This document shows, piece after piece, positions 17,759 to 61,452 of a DNA stretch of 64,000 nucleotides. The first letter of the stretch is position 1. Every line of letters begins with the position of its first letter. The DNA lies in IMG/VR virus record IMGVR_UViG_3300023179_000009, positions 62,001 through 126,000 of that record; one strand, 5' to 3'. The position numbers and the translations under genes are program-made. The notes under the pieces are model-generated. The model had not been told where the DNA came from. It did not search any database and worked only from the letters and a program-made list of their open reading frames with translations.

Positions 17759-19306
17759 TTGGAAGAAAATCAAGAAATAAATGATCCTGATCTTCAAGAT
17801 CCGGATCAAACTACCGACTCCAGATATTCTTGGGATGAGAATTTTCAAAGGCACGTTATGTCTTTGATGATATCGGACAGAATGTTTCTGCTTCAGTCTA
17901 TAGATTTAATCAAACCTTACTATTTCACAAATAAGATACATTCTAAAATTTGCAATATTGTATTTGATTTCTTTAAAAAATATCGTGTTTTGCCAATTAA
18001 AAATTTTATTATTCAGGAATTCAAGAAAGACATAACAGATGTTAAGACACTAGTGTTATACTCCACAGAACTAAATTTACTTTTTGATTATTTTCAACCA
18101 GGGATGGAATCTCGTGATTATTTGCAAGATAAAATAGTTTTTTTTGCAAAAATCCAATCTGTTAAAAAAGCTTTTCACGATTCTTTAAAATTAATAGACA
18201 GAGCGCCGGAATCAGAAGAAACTTGGAGCATGGTTTATGATGAGATGAGAAACGCCATGCAAACTCATCAAAATTTTGATATAGGATTGGATTATTTTAA
18301 AAGCCTATCTGATCGTTATGAGAAAAAAGACGATGATGACGAGAAAAAAGATCGATTTATTTTTGGACTTGATGAGATAGATCGAGAGATTGGAGGGGGC
18401 GGATATAGTCGTGGAGAAATTATATCAATTGTTGCCGGTTCTGGTGTTGGAAAATCGGTTATGCTTGCCTGCGTAACAGCTAACAATCTTTTAAGAAACA
18501 AAAAAGGTTTGTATATATCCTTGGAATTGGCAGAGGATAAGGTTGCTGCCAGAATGGACGCAATACTATCAGGTTTACCTATCCAGAATTTATTTTGTCA
18601 CAAAGAAGAATTATTCGACAGAATAAATAAATTGAATGTTCCCAAGGACGGTGTTGGTCCACTTATCATAAAACAGTTTTCCGCAGGCACGGCAACAGTG
18701 AACACTATTCGTGCGTATGTTTCTCAATTAAGATTCAATGGATTTGAACCAGATTTTATTATCATTGACTATGTTGGAGAAATGGCCTTACACCCAGATC
18801 TTAAAACTCACGAATCTCGTGAAAGAATAGTTCGTGAACTTAGAGCTATGGCTAGTGAGGAAAATGTTTTCGTTGCCACGGCCATGCAACCGAATAGAGA
18901 TGGCAAAAAAGATACTAAAGGTGATTTTGGAAGAATAGATGATGAACACCTTGCTGATTCTTTCGGTCAAATTAGACCTTTAGACGGTTGCATATCTTTA
19001 AATCAAAATGATAATGAGAAATTTTTGGGTATTGGAAGAGCCTATGTAATCAAACAAAGAGATGGAAAAAGTAGATTTACAATATATCTAAAATTCGACA
19101 AAGAAAGCCTCCGAATACAACAAATAAGCAACTCTGAGTATTTGTTTACTTTACAAAAGCATAAAGAAGAGGCATCGGATGAAACTAATATTGATATTGT
19201 AAAACAAAATTGGAAGCCAAAAAAAGATGAAGAAGTAATAGATGGAATCCAAGGAGATTACGAGAGTTACAAAGAAGTTTGCGAACAAAAATGTGAAGAT
19301 AATTGA
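17759..19306 (+). CDS. Replicative helicase, DnaB/T4 gp41-like
   Basis: AGSGVGKS, YISLEL, IIIDYVGEM, TAMQPNR, KQRDG. Confidence 0.9.
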   Translation: MEENQEINDPDLQDPDQTTDSRYSWDENFQRHVMSLMISDRMFLLQSIDLIKPYYFTNKIHSKICNIVFDFFKKYRVLPIKNFIIQEFKKDITDVKTLVLYSTELNLLFDYFQPGMESRDYLQDKIVFFAKIQSVKKAFHDSLKLIDRAPESEETWSMVYDEMRNAMQTHQNFDIGLDYFKSLSDRYEKKDDDDEKKDRFIFGLDEIDREIGGGGYSRGEIISIVAGSGVGKSVMLACVTANNLLRNKKGLYISLELAEDKVAARMDAILSGLPIQNLFCHKEELFDRINKLNVPKDGVGPLIIKQFSAGTATVNTIRAYVSQLRFNGFEPDFIIIDYVGEMALHPDLKTHESRERIVRELRAMASEENVFVATAMQPNRDGKKDTKGDFGRIDDEHLADSFGQIRPLDGCISLNQNDNEKFLGIGRAYVIKQRDGKSRFTIYLKFDKESLRIQQISNSEYLFTLQKHKEEASDETNIDIVKQNWKPKKDEEVIDGIQGDYESYKEVCEQKCEDN

Positions 19307-23548: not shown

Positions 23549-23653
23549 AACAACCCTCCAAAATATATATCAAAATTACTATATAATTATGTGTGGTCCA
23601 AAAAGACACACTTCTATGGTCATTTCGACATAGAGACAATTTAGGAGGTTTAA

Positions 23654-24130
23654 ATGAATCTTATTAATCCAAATAGGTCTATAGTTCCACTCAAAGATGA
23701 TTTGTTTTTTCCAATAGAACAACACTTTGACAAATTTTTTGATCAATTCTTCAAAAAAGATAACTTACATGCATTAGGAAACAATACCGGTTTTCCAAAA
23801 ATTAATGCGTATGAAAAAGATGGCGAACTAATTTTGTCCATTGCTGTAGCTGGTATGACTTCTAAAGACTTGAAGGTAGAAGTCGATAATGAAAATGTAT
23901 TACTCGTATCTGGTAGAGTTTCGGAAGATTATCACTTGCCGGAAGAAGCTGTGGTTCATCTTAGAGAGTTACGACTTTCTTATTTTGAAAGAAGGCTGCA
24001 ACTTCCTAAAAATATAGAAGGAGATCCAGAGGCTTTAGTTAAAGACGGAATTTTAACTTTAAAGTGGAAATTGAAAGTTGATAAATCTTCTCGTGCAAAA
24101 ACTAGATCTATACCCATTAGATCGCAGTAA
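23654..24130 (+). CDS. Small heat-shock protein (Hsp20)
   Basis: FPKINAYE..., FERRLQLP, ALVKDGILTL; SD AGGAGG. Confidence 0.92.
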   Translation: MNLINPNRSIVPLKDDLFFPIEQHFDKFFDQFFKKDNLHALGNNTGFPKINAYEKDGELILSIAVAGMTSKDLKVEVDNENVLLVSGRVSEDYHLPEEAVVHLRELRLSYFERRLQLPKNIEGDPEALVKDGILTLKWKLKVDKSSRAKTRSIPIRSQ

Positions 24131-24156
24131 AATTAAATAATTTAGATATTGGTTTT

Positions 24157-24186
24157 AGAGCGTTAGAAAAATTTTTCTAACGCTCT
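24157..24186. terminator. Intrinsic terminator (30-bp perfect palindrome)
   Basis: AGAGCGTTAGAAAAA/TTTTTCTAACGCTCT after hsp20. Confidence 0.8.
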
Positions 24187-24199
24187 TTTATACACCTCC

Positions 24200-24352
24200 C
24201 GCCAAAAACCCAGTCCTCTTTAGAGGCTGGGATGAATGGCAGTTAAGTATAGAAAAAATTCAATTCGGCACTATATTAGTATGAGATTCGGGACGGAATC
24301 TTTGTGCTTTGGCATTAGAAGCCGACTCTTTTTAGGGAGTCGGAGCGTTCAC
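24200..24352 (+). mobile_element. Non-autonomous IS200/IS605-like mini-element (left-end hairpin plus omega-RNA-like right end)
   Basis: Hairpin CCCAGTCCTC-TTTA-GAGGCTGGG (24209-24231); AGATTC-GGGACG-GAATCT; GAAG-CCGACTC..GAGTCGG-AGCGTTCAC ending TCAC; no transposase; left boundary approximate. Confidence 0.55.
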
Positions 24353-24355
24353 TTT

Positions 24356-24949
24356 ATGGAAGAATTTTTTCAAAAAATAAAAGATAAATTTGAAAAATCA
24401 AATATTTCTACAATAAACATTATTCCAAAAATTAAATTGGCGAATGTTTCATCCAAACTTTCCCCAGCTTTCAATGACCCAAAATATCTTCCTTTTTATT
24501 ATAAACTGGGATCAGAATTAAGGCCATCAAGTGTTTTGCAAGTAGGATCAAGTTTAGGTTTAATGGCTGCTGTTTTTACAAGATCTTGCACAACTGTTGA
24601 GGAGTGGTCTATTGTTGATAATAAAAAAAGAAATTTAAATATAGTTGATTGTAATTTGAAATTAAATTATAATTTAAAAACAAATTATATTTTTTTAGAT
24701 GATAAAAAATTGGAAGATCAAACTTTTAAAAAGTTCGATCTCATACTAATAACAGAAGATTTCGAAGTCAAAGATTTGAAAAAATTTTTATTTTATTTTT
24801 GGGATTTTTTAAATTTTGACTCTTTTTTAGTTGTAGATTTTCTTTTTAAAGAAGATAAAAAGAACATTTTTTTAGATTTTTGTTCAATCAAAAATAGGTC
24901 CGCATTTTTTTTGGACACAAGATATAAAATTGGTATAATAAAAAAATAA
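24356..24949 (+). CDS. Putative SAM-methyltransferase-fold protein
   Basis: SVLQVGSSLG, FDLILI, FLVVDF; start placed at MEEFF, after the mini-element. Confidence 0.55.
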   Translation: MEEFFQKIKDKFEKSNISTINIIPKIKLANVSSKLSPAFNDPKYLPFYYKLGSELRPSSVLQVGSSLGLMAAVFTRSCTTVEEWSIVDNKKRNLNIVDCNLKLNYNLKTNYIFLDDKKLEDQTFKKFDLILITEDFEVKDLKKFLFYFWDFLNFDSFLVVDFLFKEDKKNIFLDFCSIKNRSAFFLDTRYKIGIIKK

Positions 24950-26334: not shown

Positions 26335-26390
26335 AAATGAGTTGACTACAAAATTACTTGTATCAAAACTTAGAAATTACGGAGAAAAAC

Positions 26391-27443
26391 ATGCCAACTT
26401 TCGGAACACTCAACTTAGAAGAAATGGTCGGTGAGGATTCTCGTCTCAACAACGAAGGTGGACCTTCCGGTGGAAATTATTTAGAGCAATTTGTCCCTAT
26501 GCCAGACGTAAAGCCAGGACAAACAGGTTCTGTTTCTATAAGAATTTTACCTCCTGTTAGTGGCGGAAAATTGTTCCAATACAACAGAACCCACAAAATA
26601 AACAACAGAAGCATTCATTGTCCAAGACCTTTGGTAAATGGCAAGTGGGATAATAGCATTCCTTGCCCTATTTGTGAATACTATAGTTCGCTATGGAGAC
26701 AGATCGATAAGATCGAAAAGCAGCATGGTAAAGATTGTCCTGAGTCTCAACCATTAAAGGAAGAAGCACGTAATTTAAAACCAATTGAAAGATTCTACTA
26801 CAATGCCGTTGTTAGATCTATGGTTGTTGATGGCAAGGAACTTAAGAACGTTGGTCCAAGAATCCTATCAGTGGGCAAGATTCTTCACACCATGATCATT
26901 CGTGCCATAGTTGGTAATCAAGGTGACCCTGATTCTAAACTGGGCAATATTGCAGATCTAAAGAGTGGCTACGATTTCATCATTAGAAAGACTGTTACTT
27001 TGGGCAGCGAAGGTTTTCCAAAATACGATTCTTCGGGCTTTGCTAGAAATCCTAGTCCCGCTGGTACTCCCGAAGAGGTTGGTCGTTGGGCAGAGAATCT
27101 TCATGATTTAACTAAATTAAGAAACCCACGTGATGTTGATTATCTTGAGAAGGAATTGGCTATTCATCGTGGGCTAGTACAAGACGAAACAGAATCTTTT
27201 GATGCTGATTCTTTTGACGCCAAGTGGAAAGGCAAGAACTCAGACGAAGTTCAAGAAGTTGCCAAGAAGTCAACAACCAAAGTTACAGTCACTGTTCCAG
27301 AAGGTGTCCCATCCTCTAAAAACAAGAAAATTTCAGGGGCCGCAGAGGAGGATTTTGTTGAAAAAGTAACAGAATCAAAGACAGAAGATATGGCTATTGA
27401 GGATGAAGAGTTTTTGAAAGAGTTAGAAAGTATGGAAGGTTGA
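26391..27443 (+). CDS. T4 gp32-like single-stranded DNA-binding protein
   Basis: IRILPP, HCP...CPIC zinc site, GYDFII, YDSSGF, acidic C-tail; SD GGAG. Confidence 0.85.
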   Translation: MPTFGTLNLEEMVGEDSRLNNEGGPSGGNYLEQFVPMPDVKPGQTGSVSIRILPPVSGGKLFQYNRTHKINNRSIHCPRPLVNGKWDNSIPCPICEYYSSLWRQIDKIEKQHGKDCPESQPLKEEARNLKPIERFYYNAVVRSMVVDGKELKNVGPRILSVGKILHTMIIRAIVGNQGDPDSKLGNIADLKSGYDFIIRKTVTLGSEGFPKYDSSGFARNPSPAGTPEEVGRWAENLHDLTKLRNPRDVDYLEKELAIHRGLVQDETESFDADSFDAKWKGKNSDEVQEVAKKSTTKVTVTVPEGVPSSKNKKISGAAEEDFVEKVTESKTEDMAIEDEEFLKELESMEG

Positions 27444-27547: not shown

Positions 27548-28798
27548 ATGGCAAAGAAAAAATCTAATAATAATGAGATTGACATGGATGATATGTTTAG
27601 TAATATCGCAGCAGACACAGGCGGCGATGTACTGTCTGATCTTGAGAGTGTTAAATTTAGAATCGACACGGGTAACTTAGCCGTCAATTATTCCTGTTCT
27701 GGACGTTGTATTGGCGGAGGAATACCAGCGGGTCGCATCACAGAGGCTTTCGGACCAGAGGCATCTGGAAAAAGTCTTATTGGTTCAAATGTGCTTTATG
27801 GGGCACAACGATTAGGTGGATGGGCTATTATTTTGGATTGCGAGAATGCAACCAACGGTGAGTTTATGGAAAAAATTTCTCACTTAAATTTAAAACGTGT
27901 TTTACGTTACACTCCGCCTTCTCTTGAAAAGGCTTTTCGTCAAATTCACGTAACAACAAAGGCAATTCGTGATCGTGAAAAAGAAATGAAGATAGAAAGT
28001 AAGCCTATTGTGGTTGTTTTCGACTCCCTCACTGTTCCTCCTTGTGAGCGTGAATTGCGAGAAAACGAATTGCCGATGGACTACTCAGTAACAGACTGGA
28101 AAAAGGTTGTTGGCAGAATGGAACAACCTGGAGAACGTGCCAAAATTATCTCATCGGAGATGCGTAAATTACAATCAATGGTGGTTGATCAAGACGTAAC
28201 AGTGTATTTGATTAACCAAACCAGAGATAAGATAGGCGTAATGTACGGCAATCCAGAAACCACCCCTGGTGGAAATGCTGTTAAATTTTATGCTTCTCTT
28301 CGCATGAGAACCCAAACAAAGAAAAAGATTGAACACAAAAATCTTGAAAAATTCTCTGGCATAAATATGCAAGTTAAAAATATTAAAAACCGAGGCTTCA
28401 GACCTTTTGTTGTGGCCGACGATGTAAAACTTTATTTCGAACAAGGAATTGACCCTGTGTCTGGTTTGCTCGGCTGTCTGCTTTCTGGTGAAAGAATCAA
28501 AATGAAGAGTGGCGGCAATTATGAGTTGATGCCCGAGTACCTGCCTGAAGGAAAAACTGAATATAAATTTAAAGCCTCCAAGGCCGAAAATCGTATCCCA
28601 CTTCAGGTTCTCCTGGATTGTCCAAAACTTGTAGATGCTGAAAGTTCACAAGAGGTTCAGGACTATTTGGATTGTTGGGGATCAGGATTGGCCGCTTCTG
28701 AAAGTGGAGAGTATGGTGAAAAAGTTGTTGATTTTGATGCTGATGGCAACCCCTTAGAAACAGGCGATTTCACAGATAATCAAGACAGCGAAGATTGA
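27548..28798 (+). CDS. recA: RecA/UvsX recombinase
   Basis: EAFGPEASGKS, VVFDSL, INQTR, TTPGGNAVKFYASLR. Confidence 0.92.
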   Translation: MAKKKSNNNEIDMDDMFSNIAADTGGDVLSDLESVKFRIDTGNLAVNYSCSGRCIGGGIPAGRITEAFGPEASGKSLIGSNVLYGAQRLGGWAIILDCENATNGEFMEKISHLNLKRVLRYTPPSLEKAFRQIHVTTKAIRDREKEMKIESKPIVVVFDSLTVPPCERELRENELPMDYSVTDWKKVVGRMEQPGERAKIISSEMRKLQSMVVDQDVTVYLINQTRDKIGVMYGNPETTPGGNAVKFYASLRMRTQTKKKIEHKNLEKFSGINMQVKNIKNRGFRPFVVADDVKLYFEQGIDPVSGLLGCLLSGERIKMKSGGNYELMPEYLPEGKTEYKFKASKAENRIPLQVLLDCPKLVDAESSQEVQDYLDCWGSGLAASESGEYGEKVVDFDADGNPLETGDFTDNQDSED

Positions 28799-28850: not shown

Positions 28851-28902
28851 TATTTATATGCTCACCGCCAGAAAACACGGTCTCCTTTAAGGACTGACCA
28901 AT

Positions 28903-54674: not shown

Positions 54675-55753
54675 GGATACAAAATGAGATTTGTTTAGAC
54701 TATTCAGATGTTTTGATTTGTCCAAAAAGAAGCGAGTCTCCGAGTAGAAAAAATGTAATTTTAAAAAGAAAATTTACATTTTTGAACTCAAAACAAACTT
54801 GGGAAGGTGTTCCTTTGGTGGCAGCAAACATGTCAACCATAGGCACGTTTGCGATGGCTAAAGTGTTTAATAAACATGGCATGAAGGTTTGTTTACACAA
54901 ACACTACACAGTTGAGCAATTAGTTGATTTTTTTAAAGACAATCAAGCTTTTTACACACTTGGCATTAAAGATTTTGATTTTGAAAAATTAAATCATTTT
55001 GTAAATCAGCATGGTCAGCCTCCTAAGTATATTTGCTTAGATGTTGCAAACGGTTATACAAAGTTTTTTGTTGAAAAATGCAGACAAATCAGAGATAATT
55101 TTCCAGAATCGGTTTTGATGGCCGGAAATGTTTGCACTCCAGAAATGGTTCAAGAACTTCTTCTTTCTGGTGGCGTGGATATTGTTAAAATTGGTATTGG
55201 CGGCGGGTCTGCATGCACCACAAGATTGGTAGCCGGTGTGGGAGTACCCCAATTCACGGCTGTGACAGAATGTGCGGATGCCGCACATGGATTAAGAGGT
55301 CACATTGTGGCCGATGGTGGTTGCGTAACATCTGGTGATGTGGCGAAGGCATTTGGTGGTGGTGCTGATTTTGTGATGCTTGGCGGCATGTTAAGCGGAC
55401 ACGAAGAGTGCGAAGGAGATTGGGAATACGAGTGGAAAACACAATCGGGTTTTTTTCAACCAATAGATCCTGGGTACCCTACCGAAAAGAAAAAGAAGAC
55501 TTTGCTTTTTTATGGCATGAGCAGCAAAGAAGCCATGGAAAAGTTTAATGGAGGTCAATCTGGCTATCGAGCTAGTGAAGGAAGATCAGTTCGTGTACCC
55601 TATAGAGGATTTGTGGAAGATACTCTTCTTGAAATAATGGGTGGAGTTCGAAGTGCTTGCACTTATGTCGGGACAGAGAGTTTGAAAGATTTTAGTAAGT
55701 GTTGTACATTTGTTCGAGTCAACAACACCCACAACAAGGTTTTTGAAAAATGA
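54671..55753 (+). CDS. guaC: GMP reductase
   Basis: LDYSDVLI, DVANGY, KIGIGGGSACTTR, ADGG, RSACTYVG; no CBS domains. Confidence 0.93.
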   Translation: MRIQNEICLDYSDVLICPKRSESPSRKNVILKRKFTFLNSKQTWEGVPLVAANMSTIGTFAMAKVFNKHGMKVCLHKHYTVEQLVDFFKDNQAFYTLGIKDFDFEKLNHFVNQHGQPPKYICLDVANGYTKFFVEKCRQIRDNFPESVLMAGNVCTPEMVQELLLSGGVDIVKIGIGGGSACTTRLVAGVGVPQFTAVTECADAAHGLRGHIVADGGCVTSGDVAKAFGGGADFVMLGGMLSGHEECEGDWEYEWKTQSGFFQPIDPGYPTEKKKKTLLFYGMSSKEAMEKFNGGQSGYRASEGRSVRVPYRGFVEDTLLEIMGGVRSACTYVGTESLKDFSKCCTFVRVNNTHNKVFEK

Positions 55754-56121
55754 GACATGTAACTTTAAAAGATTTTTTTCAAAGCGTTAGTTACAAAATA
55801 AACGACTCCTCAGAATACATGTGGGAGTGTTATGGCAAAAATGCTTTTTCTTTGGATGTGGACAAAAAACGGGGAAAAGAATTTACTTTCTCCACTGGAA
55901 TTATTTTTGATACAAAAACTTCTAAAGTTTATCAGATGGATTCTTGGGATTATAAAAAAAGAATTATATATCGGTGGATTAATCCTAGTTATGTTAAAAA
56001 ATACTTAAAAGAATCTAAAAAAAGAGGCATTGATCCTTTTAAGGATGAAGAGCAATTTAAAATAATGGATGTTTCGGCAACTAAGATTCTTAGAGAAACT
56101 AAAATTGCCATGTCAAAATAG
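55750..56121 (+). CDS. Hypothetical protein
   Basis: 123-aa ORF. Confidence 0.65.
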   Translation: MRHVTLKDFFQSVSYKINDSSEYMWECYGKNAFSLDVDKKRGKEFTFSTGIIFDTKTSKVYQMDSWDYKKRIIYRWINPSYVKKYLKESKKRGIDPFKDEEQFKIMDVSATKILRETKIAMSK

Positions 56122-56215
56122 TTTTCCTTGACACTCAACAAGATTTGTGCAAAGATCAATACGGTGTAAGCGATGGTTCTTGCGTTTCGGAATTAAATGA
56201 TTTTAGGAGATAAAA

Positions 56216-59043
56216 TTGGAAACTACAGGATACGAAAACCTTCATAGACATAGCGATTTTAGCCTCAAAATTTAGGGGCCTTAATGACGAAAGTCATTAA
56301 GCAAACTGGATGAATTCGGGGAAGCCCTAACGTAAAGACGAGGGTAATCCCGAGCCAAGCATGTAATGCATTACATGAAGGTGTAGAGACTACTGGCGAG
56401 GTTTAGCCCTCTTAATTACCAGCAAGAGCGTCCAGCACCCCTAGGGGTGATGATATAGTCCACTCCACAAGAAACTGTGGGCAAAAGTGCTTAGACGGGT
56501 TTGCAAAAGTATCTGAATATGCCGAGTATCAAAAGCAAATAAATCAAAAGTATTTGTGTATCACCGATCATGGTGTGATGGGGGCTATTCCACAACAAGT
56601 TGCAGAATCTGAAAAACATAATTTATATCCTTTGTTTGGATGTGAACTTTATGTTAATCCGATGCAACCAAAAGTTTCTTCACGATCAGAGTCGGCGGAG
56701 TTTCGTAAATCTTTAGAAGATGAAGCAACGCAAAAAAAGTTTGATAAATCTTATCATTTATTGGCCATAGCCTACAATGATGAGGGTTATTCTAATCTTG
56801 TTCGTTTAACTTCTTGGGGCTGGATACACGGCTTCTATAGAAAGCCTAGGGTAAATCATGAAGCACTCATGAAATATAAAGAAGGAATTGTGTTCACCTC
56901 CGCCTGTGCCAACTCAGAAATAGCAAGAGCTTTTTTTGATGGTGGCGACGAGGCTGGCTTCGCCATGTTGGAAAAATATATGGCTATGTTTGGTGAGCAT
57001 TTTTATCTTGAACTTATGATGCTCGATTTTAAAGATCAAAAGCCTTATGATGCTTTTTTAATTCGTGCTCATGATAAGTATCATGTTCCGCTGACAATGA
57101 GCACCGATTGTTTTGTTAAAGGCACTTTGGTTCTAACTAATTTTGGTTTCAAAAATATCGAAGAAATTAAAGTTGGCGATAAGGTTTTTACTCATAAAAA
57201 CAGGTGGAGGTTAGTTGAACATGTTGGATCACGTTCACTAAGATCAAATGAAAAAATTTACCGTGTATCAACTAGTGCTGGTACATTTGCTTATGAAGCT
57301 ACGGGCAATCACGAAGTATATGTGGCCACTTATGAAAAAAATAAATGGAACTTTGATTGGGTAAGAACAGACGGATTGAAATCAAAAGAACACCACCTCA
57401 CAGTTCCTAAGATAAGTGAATCTAAAGTTTTCTCCGAAAAGGATTTAAGCGAAATAGATATTTTGTCCTTCTTGAAAAAAGAAGATTTTCAAGAAGGAAC
57501 AGACTACAAATCATCCAGAAAAGGCAACATGGGTTGCCGCCTTCAGTTCAACAGGGACACTCAAGAATTTTGGTCTTATCGTGGTTGGGATAGAAAATTT
57601 AGAACCACTATTCCCAGAATGTTAAAGGTAGATGATGATTTTGTTAAAATGTTGGGATGGTATATCGCTGAAGGTTGGAGTGAAAAAAATAGCAATCAGG
57701 TGGGTTTTGCTTTTCACATAGAAGAAAAACATGTAGCTGAGTGGTTAATTTCTTATTTTTCACGTTTTGATATTATTGCAAAGATTTATAAGGTCTCTGA
57801 GAACGGTATAGCAATTCGTTTTTCTTCAGTTGTCTTTAATCGTCTTTTGGGTCAAATGTGTGGTTTTGGTGCTAAAAACAAACATCTACCGAAGCCCAAC
57901 AATCAAGTTTGGCTAAAGATGTGGTCGAAAAGACAACTTTCTATGATTATTCGTGAGTATTGGCGTGGCGATGGGGGCAACGCTGCAAATAATGATGGTT
58001 TTATTTTCACATCCACATCTAAAATTTTAATACAAGAGATCGCTTTTGTTTTTAATTCTTGTGGTGTTTTTTCTTTACCTTGTGAAGAAAAAAATAGAAA
58101 AGATACATGGAATACCAAAAAATATATATCCTACACGGGAGGAAGAGGCGATCAAGTGTTGTCTTTTTTAACGAATGGAGATTGTAAGCCTTTTTTGCAC
58201 AAGGAAGTAATTGAATTTAAAGATTATTATTTGGTGCCAATCAAAGAAATCACTGCTCTTAAACACCAAGAACAAGAAGTTCACTGTTTTCAGGTAAAGG
58301 ACGATCATTCGTTCACTGCTAATCTTTACGCTGTGAGTAACTGCCACTACTGTCTTAAAGAGCAAAGTCATAATCAACGTCTTATGCTCATGCAGCAAAA
58401 CAAAAGAACGCTTGCTGAGATGGAGGCACTTGTAGAATCCGGCCAAGCAGAGGATCTATTTGAACTACAAGACACAAATCTATGGCTGAAGAGTGAGGAT
58501 GAACTAAATGAAATGTGGGAAGAAAAATTTCAAGATGTTATCGATTATGAACTTTTCAAACAATCCAAAGCAAACACAGTCAAGATTGCAGAGTTTGCCA
58601 AAGGCGTACAAATCAATAAAGAAATAAAACTTCCTAAAATAAATGACGCAGATGCACTTTTGTGGGAAGAAATCAAAAAAGGTTTTATGAAGCGTGGTTG
58701 TCCTAGAACTCCTGTTTATATAAAGCGAATCCGTGAAGAATACGATCTAATTTCAGAGAAGGGCTTTTCTAGTTACTTTTTAATTCAAAAAATGATGGTG
58801 GATGAAGCTCGAAGGAAGAGTCCAGAGATATTAGGTTTTGGAGACGGATCAGAAGCCGTTGGTCCTGGTAGAGGTTCGGTTGCTGGCTCTTTGGTTGCCT
58901 ATTGTCTTCGTCTTCATGATGTGGAGCCAATATTCCACGATTTGAGATTTAGTCGTTTTCTAAGTCCAGCACGTGGTGGCAAGCAAATGAAAATTCGCCA
59001 CACAATAGACCCAATATCTCATGAATCAATCAATTTGGATTAA
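56216..59043 (+). CDS. dnaE: DNA polymerase III alpha, N-terminal part only (PHP plus start of palm); exons 56216-56265 and 56490-59043; contains intein
   Basis: TTG start after AGGAGA; spliced HRHSDFSLLDG, TDHG, GCE, STD|CHY, GPGRGSVAGSLVAY, RFSRFLSPAR then stop. Confidence 0.9.
56266..56489 (+). ncRNA. Group I intron (224 nt, no ORF) in dnaE
   Basis: P GAATTCGGGGAA, Q AATCCCGAGC, R GTAGAGACTA (56383), S GATATAGTCC (56452); U.G in P1, terminal G; removal restores the frame. Confidence 0.92.
57109..58341 (+). mobile_element. Intein with LAGLIDADG endonuclease (411 aa) in DnaE PHP domain
   Basis: CFVKGTLVLT...VGDKV, ATGNHEV, MLGWYIAEG, REYWRGDG, ...AVSN|C. Confidence 0.93.
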
Positions 59044-60825: not shown

Positions 60826-61417
60826 GGGGTCGTAAAGGTATCGATTGGATAACGAGAGACTCAATGGCAAGTCGAGGTTGGTCAATGGCCTCGTTAAAAA
60901 TTGACCAAAGCCTTAACTGGCAAAAATAGTTACGCAATGGCTGCTTGATAAAAAGAGCAACCACGGACTGCGAATGCGAGCGGGTAGCATTCAAAAGTTC
61001 GTTGTCAAATCCCGCTGGACTAGTGCGGTCAACTTGCGTCTAGTCGAGAAAATAGGTTGAAAAGTCCGTCAGGAATCCTGTTCGTTGGAGTCTCGGCGGT
61101 CTGATAAAAAACGAAACAAACTTGTAGAGGTTGTTTTTCAAATTATCGCAAGACAGGGGTTCAGGTCGAGCCGTCAATAAATGAAAGTTTATTGATTATG
61201 ATTGGATGAATTCGGTGAAACCTTAACGAGTAAAGTCGAAGGCAATACCGAGCCAAGCCCAAGATACATCTTGGGAAGGTGTAGAGACTACTAGAGGAAT
61301 AAAGTTTCCTTAATAACTAGCATGAGCGTCCAACGCCTAAAACCGCAAGGTTATGGTGAACATATAGTCCATTAACTAAGAAATTAGTTGGGGAAATATC
61401 GACTCCCCTCGACTCCA
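60826..61417 (+). ncRNA. ssrA: tmRNA, intron-containing; tag (A)GKNSYAMAA
   Basis: Acceptor stem GGGGUCG/CGACUCC-A with G3.U70; TTAACT then ORF 60919-60948 and tandem stops; spliced T-arm AGGGG-UUCGACU-CCCCU. Confidence 0.93.
61161..61398 (+). ncRNA. Group I intron (238 nt, no ORF) in tmRNA T-loop
   Basis: P GAATTCGGTGAA, Q AATACCGAGC, R GTAGAGACTA (61281), S CATATAGTCC (61361); guide GGUCGA-GCC pairs both exons. Confidence 0.9.
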
Positions 61418-61420
61418 CTA

Positions 61421-61452
61421 AAAAGAGAGGAAGAAATTCCTCTCTTTTTTTT
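61421..61452. terminator. Bidirectional terminator after tmRNA
   Basis: AAAAGAGAGGAA-GAAA-TTCCTCTCTTTT. Confidence 0.85.

What the first reader, a model, noticed from the sequence alone, without database searches (positions are those of the whole stretch)
24200..24375. ~150-bp IS200/IS605-like mini-element that may express an orphan omega-RNA guide
Seen: left-end-type hairpin with TTTA loop, a possible promoter (TAGAAA-N16-TATATT, 24250-24277), hairpin AGATTC/GAATCT, then GAAG-hairpin-AGCGTTCAC, ending 3 nt before the next ATG. No tnpA or tnpB. Established: IS200/605 right ends encode the TnpB omega-RNA scaffold and the 3' flank is the guide. Inference: a ~70-nt scaffold plus guide TTTATGGAAGAATTTTTTC could load a TnpB or dCas-like TldR in trans, targeting the empty allele or this gene's start.
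Basis: inference. Interest (0 to 1): 0.6.

Follow-up and report, generated by a model that had tools for sequence, protein, structure and literature searches.

The report
Gene-less IS605 mini-transposon with guide-RNA module
A 161-base insertion in front of a gene of a 459-kb phage genome is a gene-less miniature copy of an IS200/IS605-type transposon that still carries the folded RNA module used by TnpB nucleases as a guide RNA; this kind of element is already known, so it is a well-documented new example and not a new principle.

Summary
Window 24192-24352 (161 nt, + strand) is a discrete insertion. Relatives of this phage have an empty site, with the hsp20 terminator's T-tract running straight into the downstream ATG.

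The element sits directly after TTTAT and ends in GTTCAC, 3 nt before the ATG at 24356. Both ends match full-length TnpB-carrying insertion sequences, two of which lie in the same 458,813-bp phage contig outside the window. At least 24 distinct insertions of this IS family follow TTTAT (one TTTAAT).

Eight further copies of the same mini-element lie at other sites in other viral or metagenome contigs.

The last 72 nt (24281-24352) fold into three hairpins plus a pseudoknot between the first hairpin's loop and the last bases of the element. This matches the published ISDra2 TnpB omega-RNA layout, and compensatory changes support it.

Not shown:
- transcription (the proposed promoter is no better than chance);
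- loading by a TnpB in trans;
- which TnpA moves the element (none found).

Verdict: a PATE/MITE-like IS605-family derivative that most likely supplies an orphan omega-RNA. It is a new member of a known kind, of moderate interest.

The parts
24187..24191 (+). TTTAT target / transposon-adjacent motif (TAM), formed by the end of the hsp20 terminator T-tract
   Evidence: 24 of 24 distinct left flanks of family members end in TTTAT (one TTTAAT). The empty site in L017 reads CTCTTTTAT|TTTATGG.
24192..24352 (+). Whole 161-nt non-autonomous IS200/IS605-family mini-element (PATE/MITE-like)
   Evidence: Homology with 8 other mini copies starts just after TTTAT and stops at GTTCAC, and the flanks are unrelated. 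The element is absent from relatives. It holds no gene of its own. The only ORF crossing it (from 24236) is an unconserved extension of the downstream gene.
24192..24245 (+). Left end (LE): 17-nt leader, imperfect hairpin 24209-24231 with TTTA loop, then GATGAATGGC
   Evidence: 43-47 of 54 positions identical to the other complete minis (L025, L045, L070, L071, L072). Near-identical to the LE of TnpB-bearing elements L018, L032, L065, L057 and others.
24246..24280 (+). A-rich linker carrying the promoter-like TAGAAA-N16-TATATT (24250-24277); probable internal-deletion junction
   Evidence: The most variable segment among minis: 17-28 of 35 positions identical. The promoter match scores 9/12 and is not above chance. 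The stretch GAAAAAATTCAATTCGGCACTATATTAG is shared with mini L028, which has a different right end.
24281..24352 (+). Right-end (RE) module = compact omega-RNA-like scaffold. Stem 1: 24283-24289 / 24296-24302, loop 24290-24295. Stem 3: 24304-24307 / 24312-24315. GAAG: 24318-24321. Stem 4 (RE hairpin, TTTA loop): 24322-24330 / 24335-24343. Tail: 24344-24352. Pseudoknot: 24291-24294 with 24347-24350.
   Evidence: CM R1 hit of 93 bits. The MFE fold gives the three hairpins. Covariation count: 98.6% of cells paired and 10 pairs changed on both sides, including the pseudoknot pair C-G/U-A. The layout matches the ISDra2 omega-RNA.
24353..24372 (+). Flank that would serve as the guide (TTTATGGAAGAATTTTTTCA); includes the start codon at 24356 of the downstream gene
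   Evidence: By position it is the 3' flank of the RE (established TnpB biology). It is identical in relative L002, which lacks the element. No other site in the window matches it with 1 mismatch or fewer.
24157..24190 (+). Intrinsic terminator of hsp20 (17-nt arms, T-tract) that supplied the target site
   Evidence: Perfect palindrome I1. The homologous terminator abuts the ATG in L008, L009 and L017.
23654..24130 (+). hsp20 gene (upstream neighbour, not part of the element)
   Evidence: Pfam HSP20 2e-11 and PHROG 432.
24356..24949 (+). Downstream 197-aa gene of unknown function (neighbour; its first bases are the putative guide)
   Evidence: Homologues of 197-199 aa start at this ATG. No Pfam or PHROG hit.

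Best explanation
Window 24192-24352 is a non-autonomous, gene-less deletion derivative (PATE/MITE-like) of an IS200/IS605-family insertion sequence of the TnpB-bearing (IS605/IS1341-like) kind. It inserted, without target duplication, directly 3' of the pentanucleotide TTTAT at the end of the hsp20 terminator, 3 nt before the start codon of the next gene.

It keeps three things:
- the left-end hairpin;
- the right-end hairpin;
- a complete compact copy, in its last ~70 nt, of the RNA scaffold that TnpB nucleases use as omega-RNA (stem 1 with a pseudoknot-forming loop, a short stem 3, the right-end hairpin as stem 4, and the 3' pseudoknot strand GUUC).

Most likely mechanism (inferred, not shown):
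1. The module is transcribed together with the adjacent flank.
2. The RNA is bound in trans by a TnpB encoded by a full-length sister element elsewhere in the same phage genome. The best candidate is the 387-aa TnpB at contig position ~25.8-27.0 kb.
3. The complex recognises TTTAT followed by TTTATGGAAGAA..., a combination that exists only where the element is absent. That means after scarless excision, or in a co-infecting relative.
4. Cutting there, followed by recombinational repair from a copy that carries the element, restores or spreads it.

Movement itself would need a Y1 TnpA supplied in trans, which was not found.
For: Insertion and empty site:
- Collinear relative L002 matches the window up to 23555 and again from 24353.
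- L002 keeps the right arm of the terminator and then runs straight into the ATG.
- The distant relatives L008, L009 and L017 have hsp20, the terminator and the ATG with no element. L017 reads CTCTTTTAT|TTTATGG.

Family ends:
- LE and RE match TnpB-encoding elements in L018, L032, L065, L057, L062, L063, L068 and L031.
- 24 of 24 distinct insertions follow TTTAT. All end in (G/A)TTCAC or GTCAC.

Multiple copies: 8 further minis with unrelated flanks (L025, L045, L069, L070, L071, L072, L074, L075).

RNA module:
- The same three-hairpin fold is predicted for the mini and for the TnpB elements L076, L080 and L081.
- On 13 modules, 98.6% of cells pair. 10 pairs change on both sides. The covariation score is 0.409, against 0.200 for shuffles (0 of 500 reach it) and at most 0.095 for slid controls.
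- The pseudoknot pair covaries: C-G in 7 sequences, U-A in 5. L081 adds a further A-U to C-G change.
- The layout and the terminal G-U-N-C-A motif match the ISDra2 omega-RNA described in PMC10097598.

Trans partner:
- Two TnpB genes lie on the same contig.
- The L032 TnpB is a close homologue of ISDra2 TnpB (E 7e-48) with its D, E and D motifs present.
- The right-end module of the L032 element is the closest full-length match to the mini's module.

Retention of the module:
- L069 and L074 lost the left end but kept the right-end module.
- Other deletion derivatives of 251, 293 and 411 nt also keep the RNA region.

Literature: PATEs that encode omega-RNAs acted on in trans by TnpB are described in PMC10055086.
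Against: - There is no expression data. The promoter-like site is not above chance, its -35 is not conserved, and two copies have G at the key second position of the -10.
- The hsp20 terminator lies just upstream, so read-through transcription would be limited.
- No TnpB was found whose own right end carries the mini-type stem 1, in IMG/VR or in JGI metagenomes. Compatibility with the genome's TnpBs is therefore assumed, not shown.
- The right-end hairpin, GAAG and the tail are also needed at the DNA level by TnpA, so part of the conservation has another explanation.
- Most covariation separates two clades (minis versus type-3 elements). It therefore represents few independent events and mainly reflects selection in TnpB-bearing ancestors.
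- Stem 1 identity among the minis is partly by construction, because it was the search pattern.
- No Rfam family matches.
- No Y1 TnpA was found in the window or in the elements inspected.
- The scaffold is 70 nt, against 116 nt (98 nt when trimmed) for ISDra2. Whether it is sufficient is untested.
Confidence: 0.55

Rival explanations
1. An inert selfish relic. It is a mini-transposon (or a decaying one) that persists only because TnpA can still move it or because it is young. The folded right-end module is a leftover of the tnpB 3' region and the RNA has no present function.
For: - No evidence of transcription, and the promoter match is at chance level.
- The right-end hairpin, GAAG and the tail are needed by TnpA as DNA.
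- Copies are similar enough (63-67 of 72 positions in the module for the copies with both ends, 60/72 for L069) that recent spread could explain the conservation.
- No cognate TnpB with the same stem 1 was found.
- Deletion derivatives of many sizes exist, as expected from random decay.
Against: - The module is better conserved than the linker in the same copies (63-67 of 72 against 17-28 of 35).
- Stem 3, which TnpA is not known to need, shows a compensatory change within the mini family (GUGC/GCAU against GUAC/GUAC).
- Two copies that lost the left end, and so cannot transpose, still keep the whole module.
- Every deletion derivative seen retains at least the predicted scaffold of its type.
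Confidence: 0.33
2. The element acts in cis on the downstream gene. It brings a promoter, a GGAG ribosome-binding site (24341-24344) or a structured 5' leader to the 197-aa gene. Alternatively it creates a 40-codon N-terminal extension from the ATG at 24236.
For: - It lies 3 nt from the start codon.
- Relatives without it have no Shine-Dalgarno sequence before this ATG.
- Several other copies also sit just upstream of gene starts (L069, L070, L072).
- ORF 24236-24949 is open through the element, with GAGG 9 nt upstream.
Against: - The flanks of the different copies are unrelated genes, so any such effect is incidental.
- Homologues of the gene start at the 24356 ATG and the extension is not conserved.
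- AT-rich intergenic DNA is simply where TTTAT targets occur and where insertions are tolerated.
- The promoter match is not above chance.
Confidence: 0.08
3. It is the guide for a nuclease-dead TnpB derivative (TldR-like) that represses the downstream gene or a host gene.
For: The guide would cover the start of the downstream gene. TldR systems are known, some of them in prophages (paper listed).
Against: - The one TnpB of this phage examined for them (L032) keeps its RuvC D/E/D motifs; the second TnpB on the contig (L065) was not checked for these motifs.
- No short or inactivated TnpB was seen next to the element or anywhere in the window.
- On the phage's own DNA the TAM is separated from the target by the element itself.
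- No second target was found in the window.
Confidence: 0.03

Closest known systems
PATEs (palindrome-associated transposable elements): protein-less IS200/IS605 derivatives, for example those noted in Geobacillus stearothermophilus by Meers et al. 2023 (PMC10055086)
   Same: - No gene; both subterminal hairpin ends retained.
- Same ends as TnpB-bearing sister elements in the same genome.
- Carries the omega-RNA region, which would have to be used in trans by a TnpB.
   Different: - Found in a ~459-kb phage genome and other viral contigs, not in a bacterial chromosome.
- The target is TTTAT.
- The scaffold is only ~70 nt.
- No TnpA for the family was identified.
- The left-end motif was absent from 185,579 reference bacterial and archaeal genomes.
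ISDra2 (Deinococcus radiodurans) TnpB and its omega-RNA (PDB 8H1J, 8EXA; PMC10097598)
   Same: - The TnpB of the sister element is a clear homologue (E 7e-48, aligned over nearly the full length).
- The RNA has stem 1 with the pseudoknot strand in its loop, a right-end hairpin with a UUUA loop about 20 nt from the end, and a 3' terminus G-U-N-C-A that pairs with G-G-N-A-U/C.
- The tnpB stop codon lies inside the RNA region.
   Different: - The scaffold is 70 nt, against 116 nt.
- The stem 1 loop is 6 nt, not 19 nt. Stem 3 is a 4-bp hairpin.
- A separate stem 2 is not evident in the compact type.
- The TAM is TTTAT, not TTGAT.
- The RNA here stands alone without tnpB.
IS608 / IS200-IS605 'peel-and-paste' transposition by Y1 TnpA
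   Same: - Insertion 3' of a fixed short motif without duplication.
- Imperfect hairpins set back from both ends (17 nt at the left, 9 nt at the right here).
- Left and right hairpins resemble each other.
- A seamless empty site.
   Different: No TnpA gene was found in any element of this family or in the window. The DNA-guide pairing rules were not tested.
Homing endonuclease genes and mobile introns of T4-like and jumbo phages
   Same: The proposed outcome is the same: cutting the allele that lacks the element during co-infection and copying the element in. The same window also holds two group I introns and an intein.
   Different: Recognition would be RNA-guided through TnpB and split between two loci. 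Nothing of this was tested here.

Membership tests
IS200/IS605 family (element level) | Subterminal imperfect hairpins at both ends, and no terminal inverted repeats | tested here: met
   LE hairpin at 24209-24231 and RE hairpin at 24322-24343. They resemble each other and those of all family members.
IS200/IS605 family (element level) | Insertion directly 3' of a fixed tetra- or pentanucleotide, without target-site duplication | tested here: met
   TTTAT precedes 24 of 24 distinct insertions (one TTTAAT). The empty site CTCTTTTAT|TTTATGG in L017 shows no duplication.
IS200/IS605 family (element level) | Full-length elements with the same ends encode TnpB (OrfB_IS605) and/or Y1 TnpA | tested here: met
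   TnpB of 387-388 aa with OrfB_IS605, Cas12f1-like_TNB and HTH_OrfB_IS605 lies between the same ends in L018, L032 and L065. The 1.3-kb L057, L062, L063 and L068 elements carry the same ends and show TnpB-like coding sequence at both ends, read by eye without a domain search.
IS200/IS605 family (element level) | Mobilised by a Y1 (HUH) TnpA transposase | tested here: inconclusive
   No Y1_Tnp hit in any ORF of the inspected elements or among 36 mid-size ORFs of the window. Most of the 459-kb contig, and the host, could not be searched.
IS200/IS605 family (element level) | Presence/absence polymorphism with a seamless empty site, and copies at unrelated loci | tested here: met
   Empty sites in L002, L008, L009 and L017. 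9 mini copies have unrelated flanks.
PATE / MITE-like non-autonomous derivative | Both ends kept, no protein-coding gene, much shorter than the parent | tested here: met
   161 nt, against 1304-1927 nt for TnpB-bearing relatives. It has no ORF of its own.
TnpB omega-RNA | Scaffold ends exactly at the right end of the element, and the guide is the adjacent flank | tested here: met
   The module 24281-24352 ends at the element boundary defined by the empty sites. This is positional evidence only.
TnpB omega-RNA | Conserved secondary structure with a pseudoknot next to the guide, supported by covariation | tested here: met
   Counts, folds, comparison with the ISDra2 description. Caveats: few independent events, and the alignment was fitted to the hairpins (though not to the pseudoknot).
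TnpB omega-RNA | Match to a curated RNA family | tested here: not met
   No Rfam 15 hit in 24191-24356 at E up to 10, nor in sister elements L032, L068 and L028 at E up to 1. Rfam may hold no model for this subtype.
TnpB omega-RNA | A catalytically intact TnpB available in the same genome | tested here: met
   L032 and L065 lie on the same contig as the window. They have TnpB domains. L032 keeps the D/E/D motifs. Both are outside the 64-kb window.
TnpB omega-RNA | The RNA is expressed, bound by TnpB and directs TAM-dependent cleavage | not testable with these tools
   This needs RNA sequencing and biochemical or interference assays.
TldR (nuclease-dead TnpB regulators) | An inactivated TnpB homologue encoded next to, or together with, the guide RNA | tested here: not met
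   No TnpB-like sequence in the window. The family TnpB examined has intact catalytic motifs.

The most novel reading that the evidence does not exclude
The mini-element may be one half of a split RNA-guided homing, or competitor-exclusion, device of a jumbo phage. Its naturally minimal ~70-nt omega-RNA would be loaded by a TnpB encoded about 58 kb away. The complex would cut co-infecting relatives that lack the insertion (target identical in the L002-type phages, TAM TTTGT/TTTAT), so that the element and its neighbours, such as hsp20, are copied in or the rival genome is destroyed.

The IS family also appears to be confined to viral and metagenome contigs. Its left-end motif was absent from 185,579 reference prokaryote genomes.
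Probability: 0.2. Interest if true: 0.7.

Novelty: new member of a known kind. Interest (0 to 1): 0.45.

Why it matters
- **A clean natural example.** It shows how TnpB guide RNAs can become separated from their nuclease gene. The empty site, sister elements, target motif and RNA structure were all recovered from sequence alone.
- **A testable mechanism in phages.** If the RNA is used in trans, large phages would have an RNA-guided way to keep or spread small DNA insertions, and perhaps to damage related phages during co-infection. That would stand beside the protein-guided homing endonucleases already known in phages.
- **A very small scaffold.** At 70 nt it is much smaller than the 116-nt ISDra2 scaffold. 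If it is active with its TnpB it would interest people who build compact genome editors.
- **An annotation point.** The 40-codon upstream extension of ORF 24236-24949 comes from the insertion. The gene starts at 24356.

Tried and rejected
- **Rfam.** Nothing in the element at E up to 10, and nothing relevant in sister elements.
- **Other copies in the window.** None found by BLAST or by the covariance model. The only related thing is a solo LE-like end at 28852-28896.
- **DNA similarity to cultured phages.** None for the locus or for the element.
- **Reference bacterial and archaeal genomes.** No exact match to the stem-1 21-mer or to the left-end hairpin motif. No host clue, and no TnpA-bearing copy.
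- **Search for a TnpA.** None among the cargo ORFs of L018, L019, L021, L024, L032, L064 and L065, none among 36 window ORFs, and none beside the TnpB of Thermus phage phiLo. I did not look further.
- **The parent TnpB element carrying the mini-type stem 1.** Not found in IMG/VR or in JGI metagenomes.
- **Riboswitch or native phage sRNA.** Rejected, because the sequence is an insertion missing from relatives and repeated at unrelated loci.
- **N-terminal extension of the downstream protein (ORF from 24236).** Rejected as the native start, because homologues begin at the 24356 ATG.
- **hsp20 and the element as one mobile unit.** This was suggested by the single 797-bp gap against L002. I rejected it because distant relatives keep hsp20 without the element, and because L002 keeps the right arm of the terminator. 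The gap is therefore two separate events.
- **Stem 2 as CUUU/GAAG.** It is possible, but the bases are invariant and overlap stem 1, and L081 lacks it. I left it open.
- **The first MAFFT alignment of the modules.** It misaligned L081 and stem 3. It was replaced by a model-based alignment.
Full report
**Setting**

The window is positions 62001-126000 of IMG/VR contig IMGVR_UViG_3300023179_000009 (458,813 bp; the same sequence as Ga0214923_10000003). It has about 33% G+C and phage replication genes:
- a DnaB-like helicase at 17759-19306;
- an SSB at 26358-27443;
- a UvsX/RecA-like recombinase at 27548-28798.

No cultured phage is close at the DNA level. The finding lies between hsp20 (23654-24130; Pfam HSP20) and a 197-aa gene of unknown function (24356-24949).

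**Check of the observation**

- a perfect terminator palindrome at 24157-24190;
- a hairpin with a TTTA loop at 24209-24231;
- AGATTC/GAATCT at 24284-24301;
- GAAG at 24318-24321;
- the hairpin CCGACTC/GAGTCGG at 24322-24343;
- the tail AGCGTTCAC ending at 24352, 3 nt before the ATG.

The promoter-like TAGAAA-N16-TATATT exists but scores 9 of 12. The scan found 7 such sites in the 1.7 kb around it, against 8.5 expected by chance. The region folds better than shuffled sequence on both strands (z -2.9 and -3.7). Rfam finds nothing there. There is no second copy in the window.

**It is an insertion with an empty site in relatives**

A relative with about 87% nucleotide identity (L002) is collinear with the window up to 23555 and again from 24353. 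L002 still has the right arm and T-tract of the terminator, followed at once by the ATG.

More distant relatives were found through the 42-48% identical homologues of the downstream protein. They keep hsp20 and the terminator, which abuts the ATG, and they have no element. L017 reads CTCTTTTAT then TTTATGG. The window reads CTCTTTTAT, then 161 nt, then TTTATGG.

So two separate events distinguish the genomes:
- hsp20 was lost by deletion in the L002/L006/L018 group;
- independently, 24192-24352 was inserted precisely, without target duplication, in the window's lineage. Seamless excision elsewhere cannot be excluded, because IS200/IS605 excision leaves no scar.

**The ends are those of a TnpB-carrying IS family**

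In relatives L018, L019 and L021, a 1.9-kb insertion follows the recombinase gene and is absent from L020. It encodes a 388-aa TnpB (OrfB_IS605 4.5e-31, Cas12f1-like_TNB, HTH_OrfB_IS605).

Read in its own orientation, it begins after TTTAT with a left end that is nearly the same as window 24192-24245. It ends with GAAGCC, a hairpin and GTTCAC, like window 24318-24352.

A 16-mer from the left end recovered 24 true left ends in IMG/VR. The elements they belong to range from 154 to 1927 nt. All distinct insertion sites are preceded by TTTAT, with one TTTAAT.

Two full-length members lie on the window's own contig but outside the window:
- L032 at about 25.5-28.9 kb, with a 387-aa TnpB and an Arr-ms-like cargo ORF;
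- L065 at about 455 kb, with a 388-aa TnpB and an unknown ORF.

The window itself has no TnpB.

**The mini-element is a family of its own**

Searches with the left-end motif and with a 21-mer from the first right-end hairpin found eight more copies:
- L025 and L045, on one G+C-rich viral contig;
- L070, L071 and L072, which are complete;
- L075, which has an internal insertion;
- L069 and L074, which lack the left-end hairpin.

Homology starts just after TTTAT and stops at GTTCAC, and the flanks are unrelated. Two of the copies come from the same metagenome as the window.

Identity of the other copies that keep both ends to the window copy, by segment:

| Segment | Identical positions |
|---|---|
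| Left end | 41-47 of 54 |
| Linker | 17-28 of 35 |
| Right-end module | 63-67 of 72 |

Part of the module's identity is by construction, because the 21-mer was the search pattern. However, L025 and L045 were found independently through the left end.

Other internal-deletion derivatives of 251, 293 and 411 nt (L028, L029, L047) also keep the 3' region.

**The right-end module has the layout of a TnpB omega-RNA**

The TnpB of L032 is a clear homologue of ISDra2 TnpB (8H1J, E 7e-48). The three RuvC motifs are present, as GIDVG, CVEKL and SRDLNAA. Their catalytic role is established knowledge for ISDra2.

For ISDra2, the published structure describes a 116-nt scaffold (PMC10097598):
- stem 1, whose loop supplies one pseudoknot strand (-106 to -102);
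- stems 2 and 3;
- stem 4, with a UUUA loop at -20 to -17;
- a 3' strand (-6 to -2, G-U-N-C-A) that forms the pseudoknot next to the guide.

The window module maps onto this:
- stem 1: 24283-24289 / 24296-24302, with loop GGGACG;
- a short stem 3: 24304-24307 / 24312-24315;
- GAAG at -35 to -32;
- stem 4: 24322-24330 / 24335-24343, with a TTTA loop;
- the terminus GUUCAC.

Loop bases 24291-24294 (GGAC) can pair with 24347-24350 (GUUC).

RNAfold gives the same three hairpins for the mini and for the TnpB elements L076 (the same element as L032), L080 and L081. I built a covariance model from 12 modules, used it to align 13 modules, and counted pairs with the pseudoknot added. The pseudoknot was not part of the model. 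Results:
- 98.6% of cells form standard pairs;
- 10 pairs change on both sides;
- the covariation score is 0.409, against 0.200 for shuffles (0 of 500 reach it) and at most 0.095 when partners are slid.

The pseudoknot pair between loop position 5 and position -6 is C-G in seven sequences and U-A in five. L081, whose TnpB is only 45% identical, has loop GGACUA and tail AGUCAC, which gives another compensated pair. The larger right ends of the other two TnpB types contain GGAAC at a hairpin apex and end in GUUCAC.

Caveats:
- most changes separate two clades, so they represent few independent events;
- stem 4, GAAG and the tail are also needed as DNA by TnpA;
- the CUUU/GAAG 'stem 2' is invariant and uncertain.

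**How it most likely works**

Shown:
- the insertion, the target motif, the family relationship and the conserved fold;
- intact TnpB genes in the same genome.

Inferred:
- the module plus flank is transcribed. This could be from the weak internal promoter-like site, whose -10-like box is kept in most copies but whose -35 is not. It could also be by read-through;
- a TnpB binds it in trans;
- the complex targets TTTAT followed by TTTATGGAAGAA...

That target is interrupted by the element on the phage's own DNA. It is restored by excision, and it is present in relatives. The L002 flank is identical for more than 40 nt, but its motif is TTTGT. L017 has TTTAT, but its flank diverges after 9 nt. 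No other site in the window matches the guide.

[quoted passage not shown] The literature already notes that PATEs often encode omega-RNAs that must be used in trans (PMC10055086).

**What is missing**

- There is no expression evidence.
- No TnpB has the same stem 1 as the minis.
- No TnpA was found anywhere I could look.
- The left-end motif and the stem-1 motif are absent from 185,579 reference prokaryote genomes. So the host and the mobilising enzyme remain unknown.

**Comparison and novelty**

TnpB genes are common in cultured phages: 632 records are hit by tblastn. PATEs with orphan omega-RNAs are described for bacteria. This is therefore a new member of a known kind. It is notable for its phage setting, its very compact scaffold and the clean empty-site evidence.

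I put the identification at about 0.95. I put the omega-RNA-in-trans function at about 0.45-0.55.

Noticed in passing
window 28852-28896 (+): A second, solitary left-end-like sequence. It matches the family LE consensus at 38 of 45 positions, is preceded by TTTAT, and has a degraded hairpin. It lies between the UvsX terminator and the DUF2459 gene. No right-end module follows it. The same spacer holds a full TnpB element, on the other strand, in relatives L018, L019 and L021.
   Followed up: partly
window 60827-61430 (+): A phage-encoded tmRNA (Rfam 82.7 bits). Its acceptor strands are GGGGUCG and CGACUCC with a G3-U pair, and its tag reads roughly GKNSYAMAA. It is interrupted near the T-loop by a group I intron (61151-61390, 65.5 bits). 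ARAGORN does not call it.
   Followed up: partly
window 55750-59043 (+): A group I intron (56256-56481, 98.4 bits) lies just upstream of an ORF that has PHP and DNA_pol3_alpha domains and also contains an intein with a LAGLIDADG domain. The polymerase gene appears to be invaded by both an intron and an intein.
   Followed up: partly
window 23556-24170 versus L002 2946-2997: hsp20 is missing from the closest relatives (L002, L006, L007, L018-L022). The deletion of roughly 615 bp left the right arm of the hsp20 terminator in place. More distant relatives (L008-L012) keep hsp20.
   Followed up: yes
L032 1498-1920 (-); L024 41-472; L065 9821-10408; L018 12534-13043 (-); L054: Full-length TnpB elements of this family carry a variable 'cargo' ORF where tnpA would normally sit. 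All cargo ORFs begin with the same seven codons (MKSFNEW) and then diverge. Two of them have an Arr-ms (rifampin ADP-ribosyltransferase-like) domain. This looks like cassette exchange behind a shared promoter and start.
   Followed up: partly
L054 (IMGVR_UViG_3300032233_002826), element 3' end: This element has a tandemly duplicated right end: two copies of the last ~70 nt, the first ending in GTTCAA.
   Followed up: no
window 24236-24949 (+): The mechanical ORF list extends the downstream gene by 40 codons through the mini-element. Homologues show that the true start is the ATG at 24356.
   Followed up: yes
L029 2221-2513 and L066: A 293-nt deletion derivative of the type-3 element. It joins the left end directly to the last ~200 nt of tnpB plus the right end. 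It may be an intermediate between full-length elements and the 161-nt minis.
   Followed up: partly
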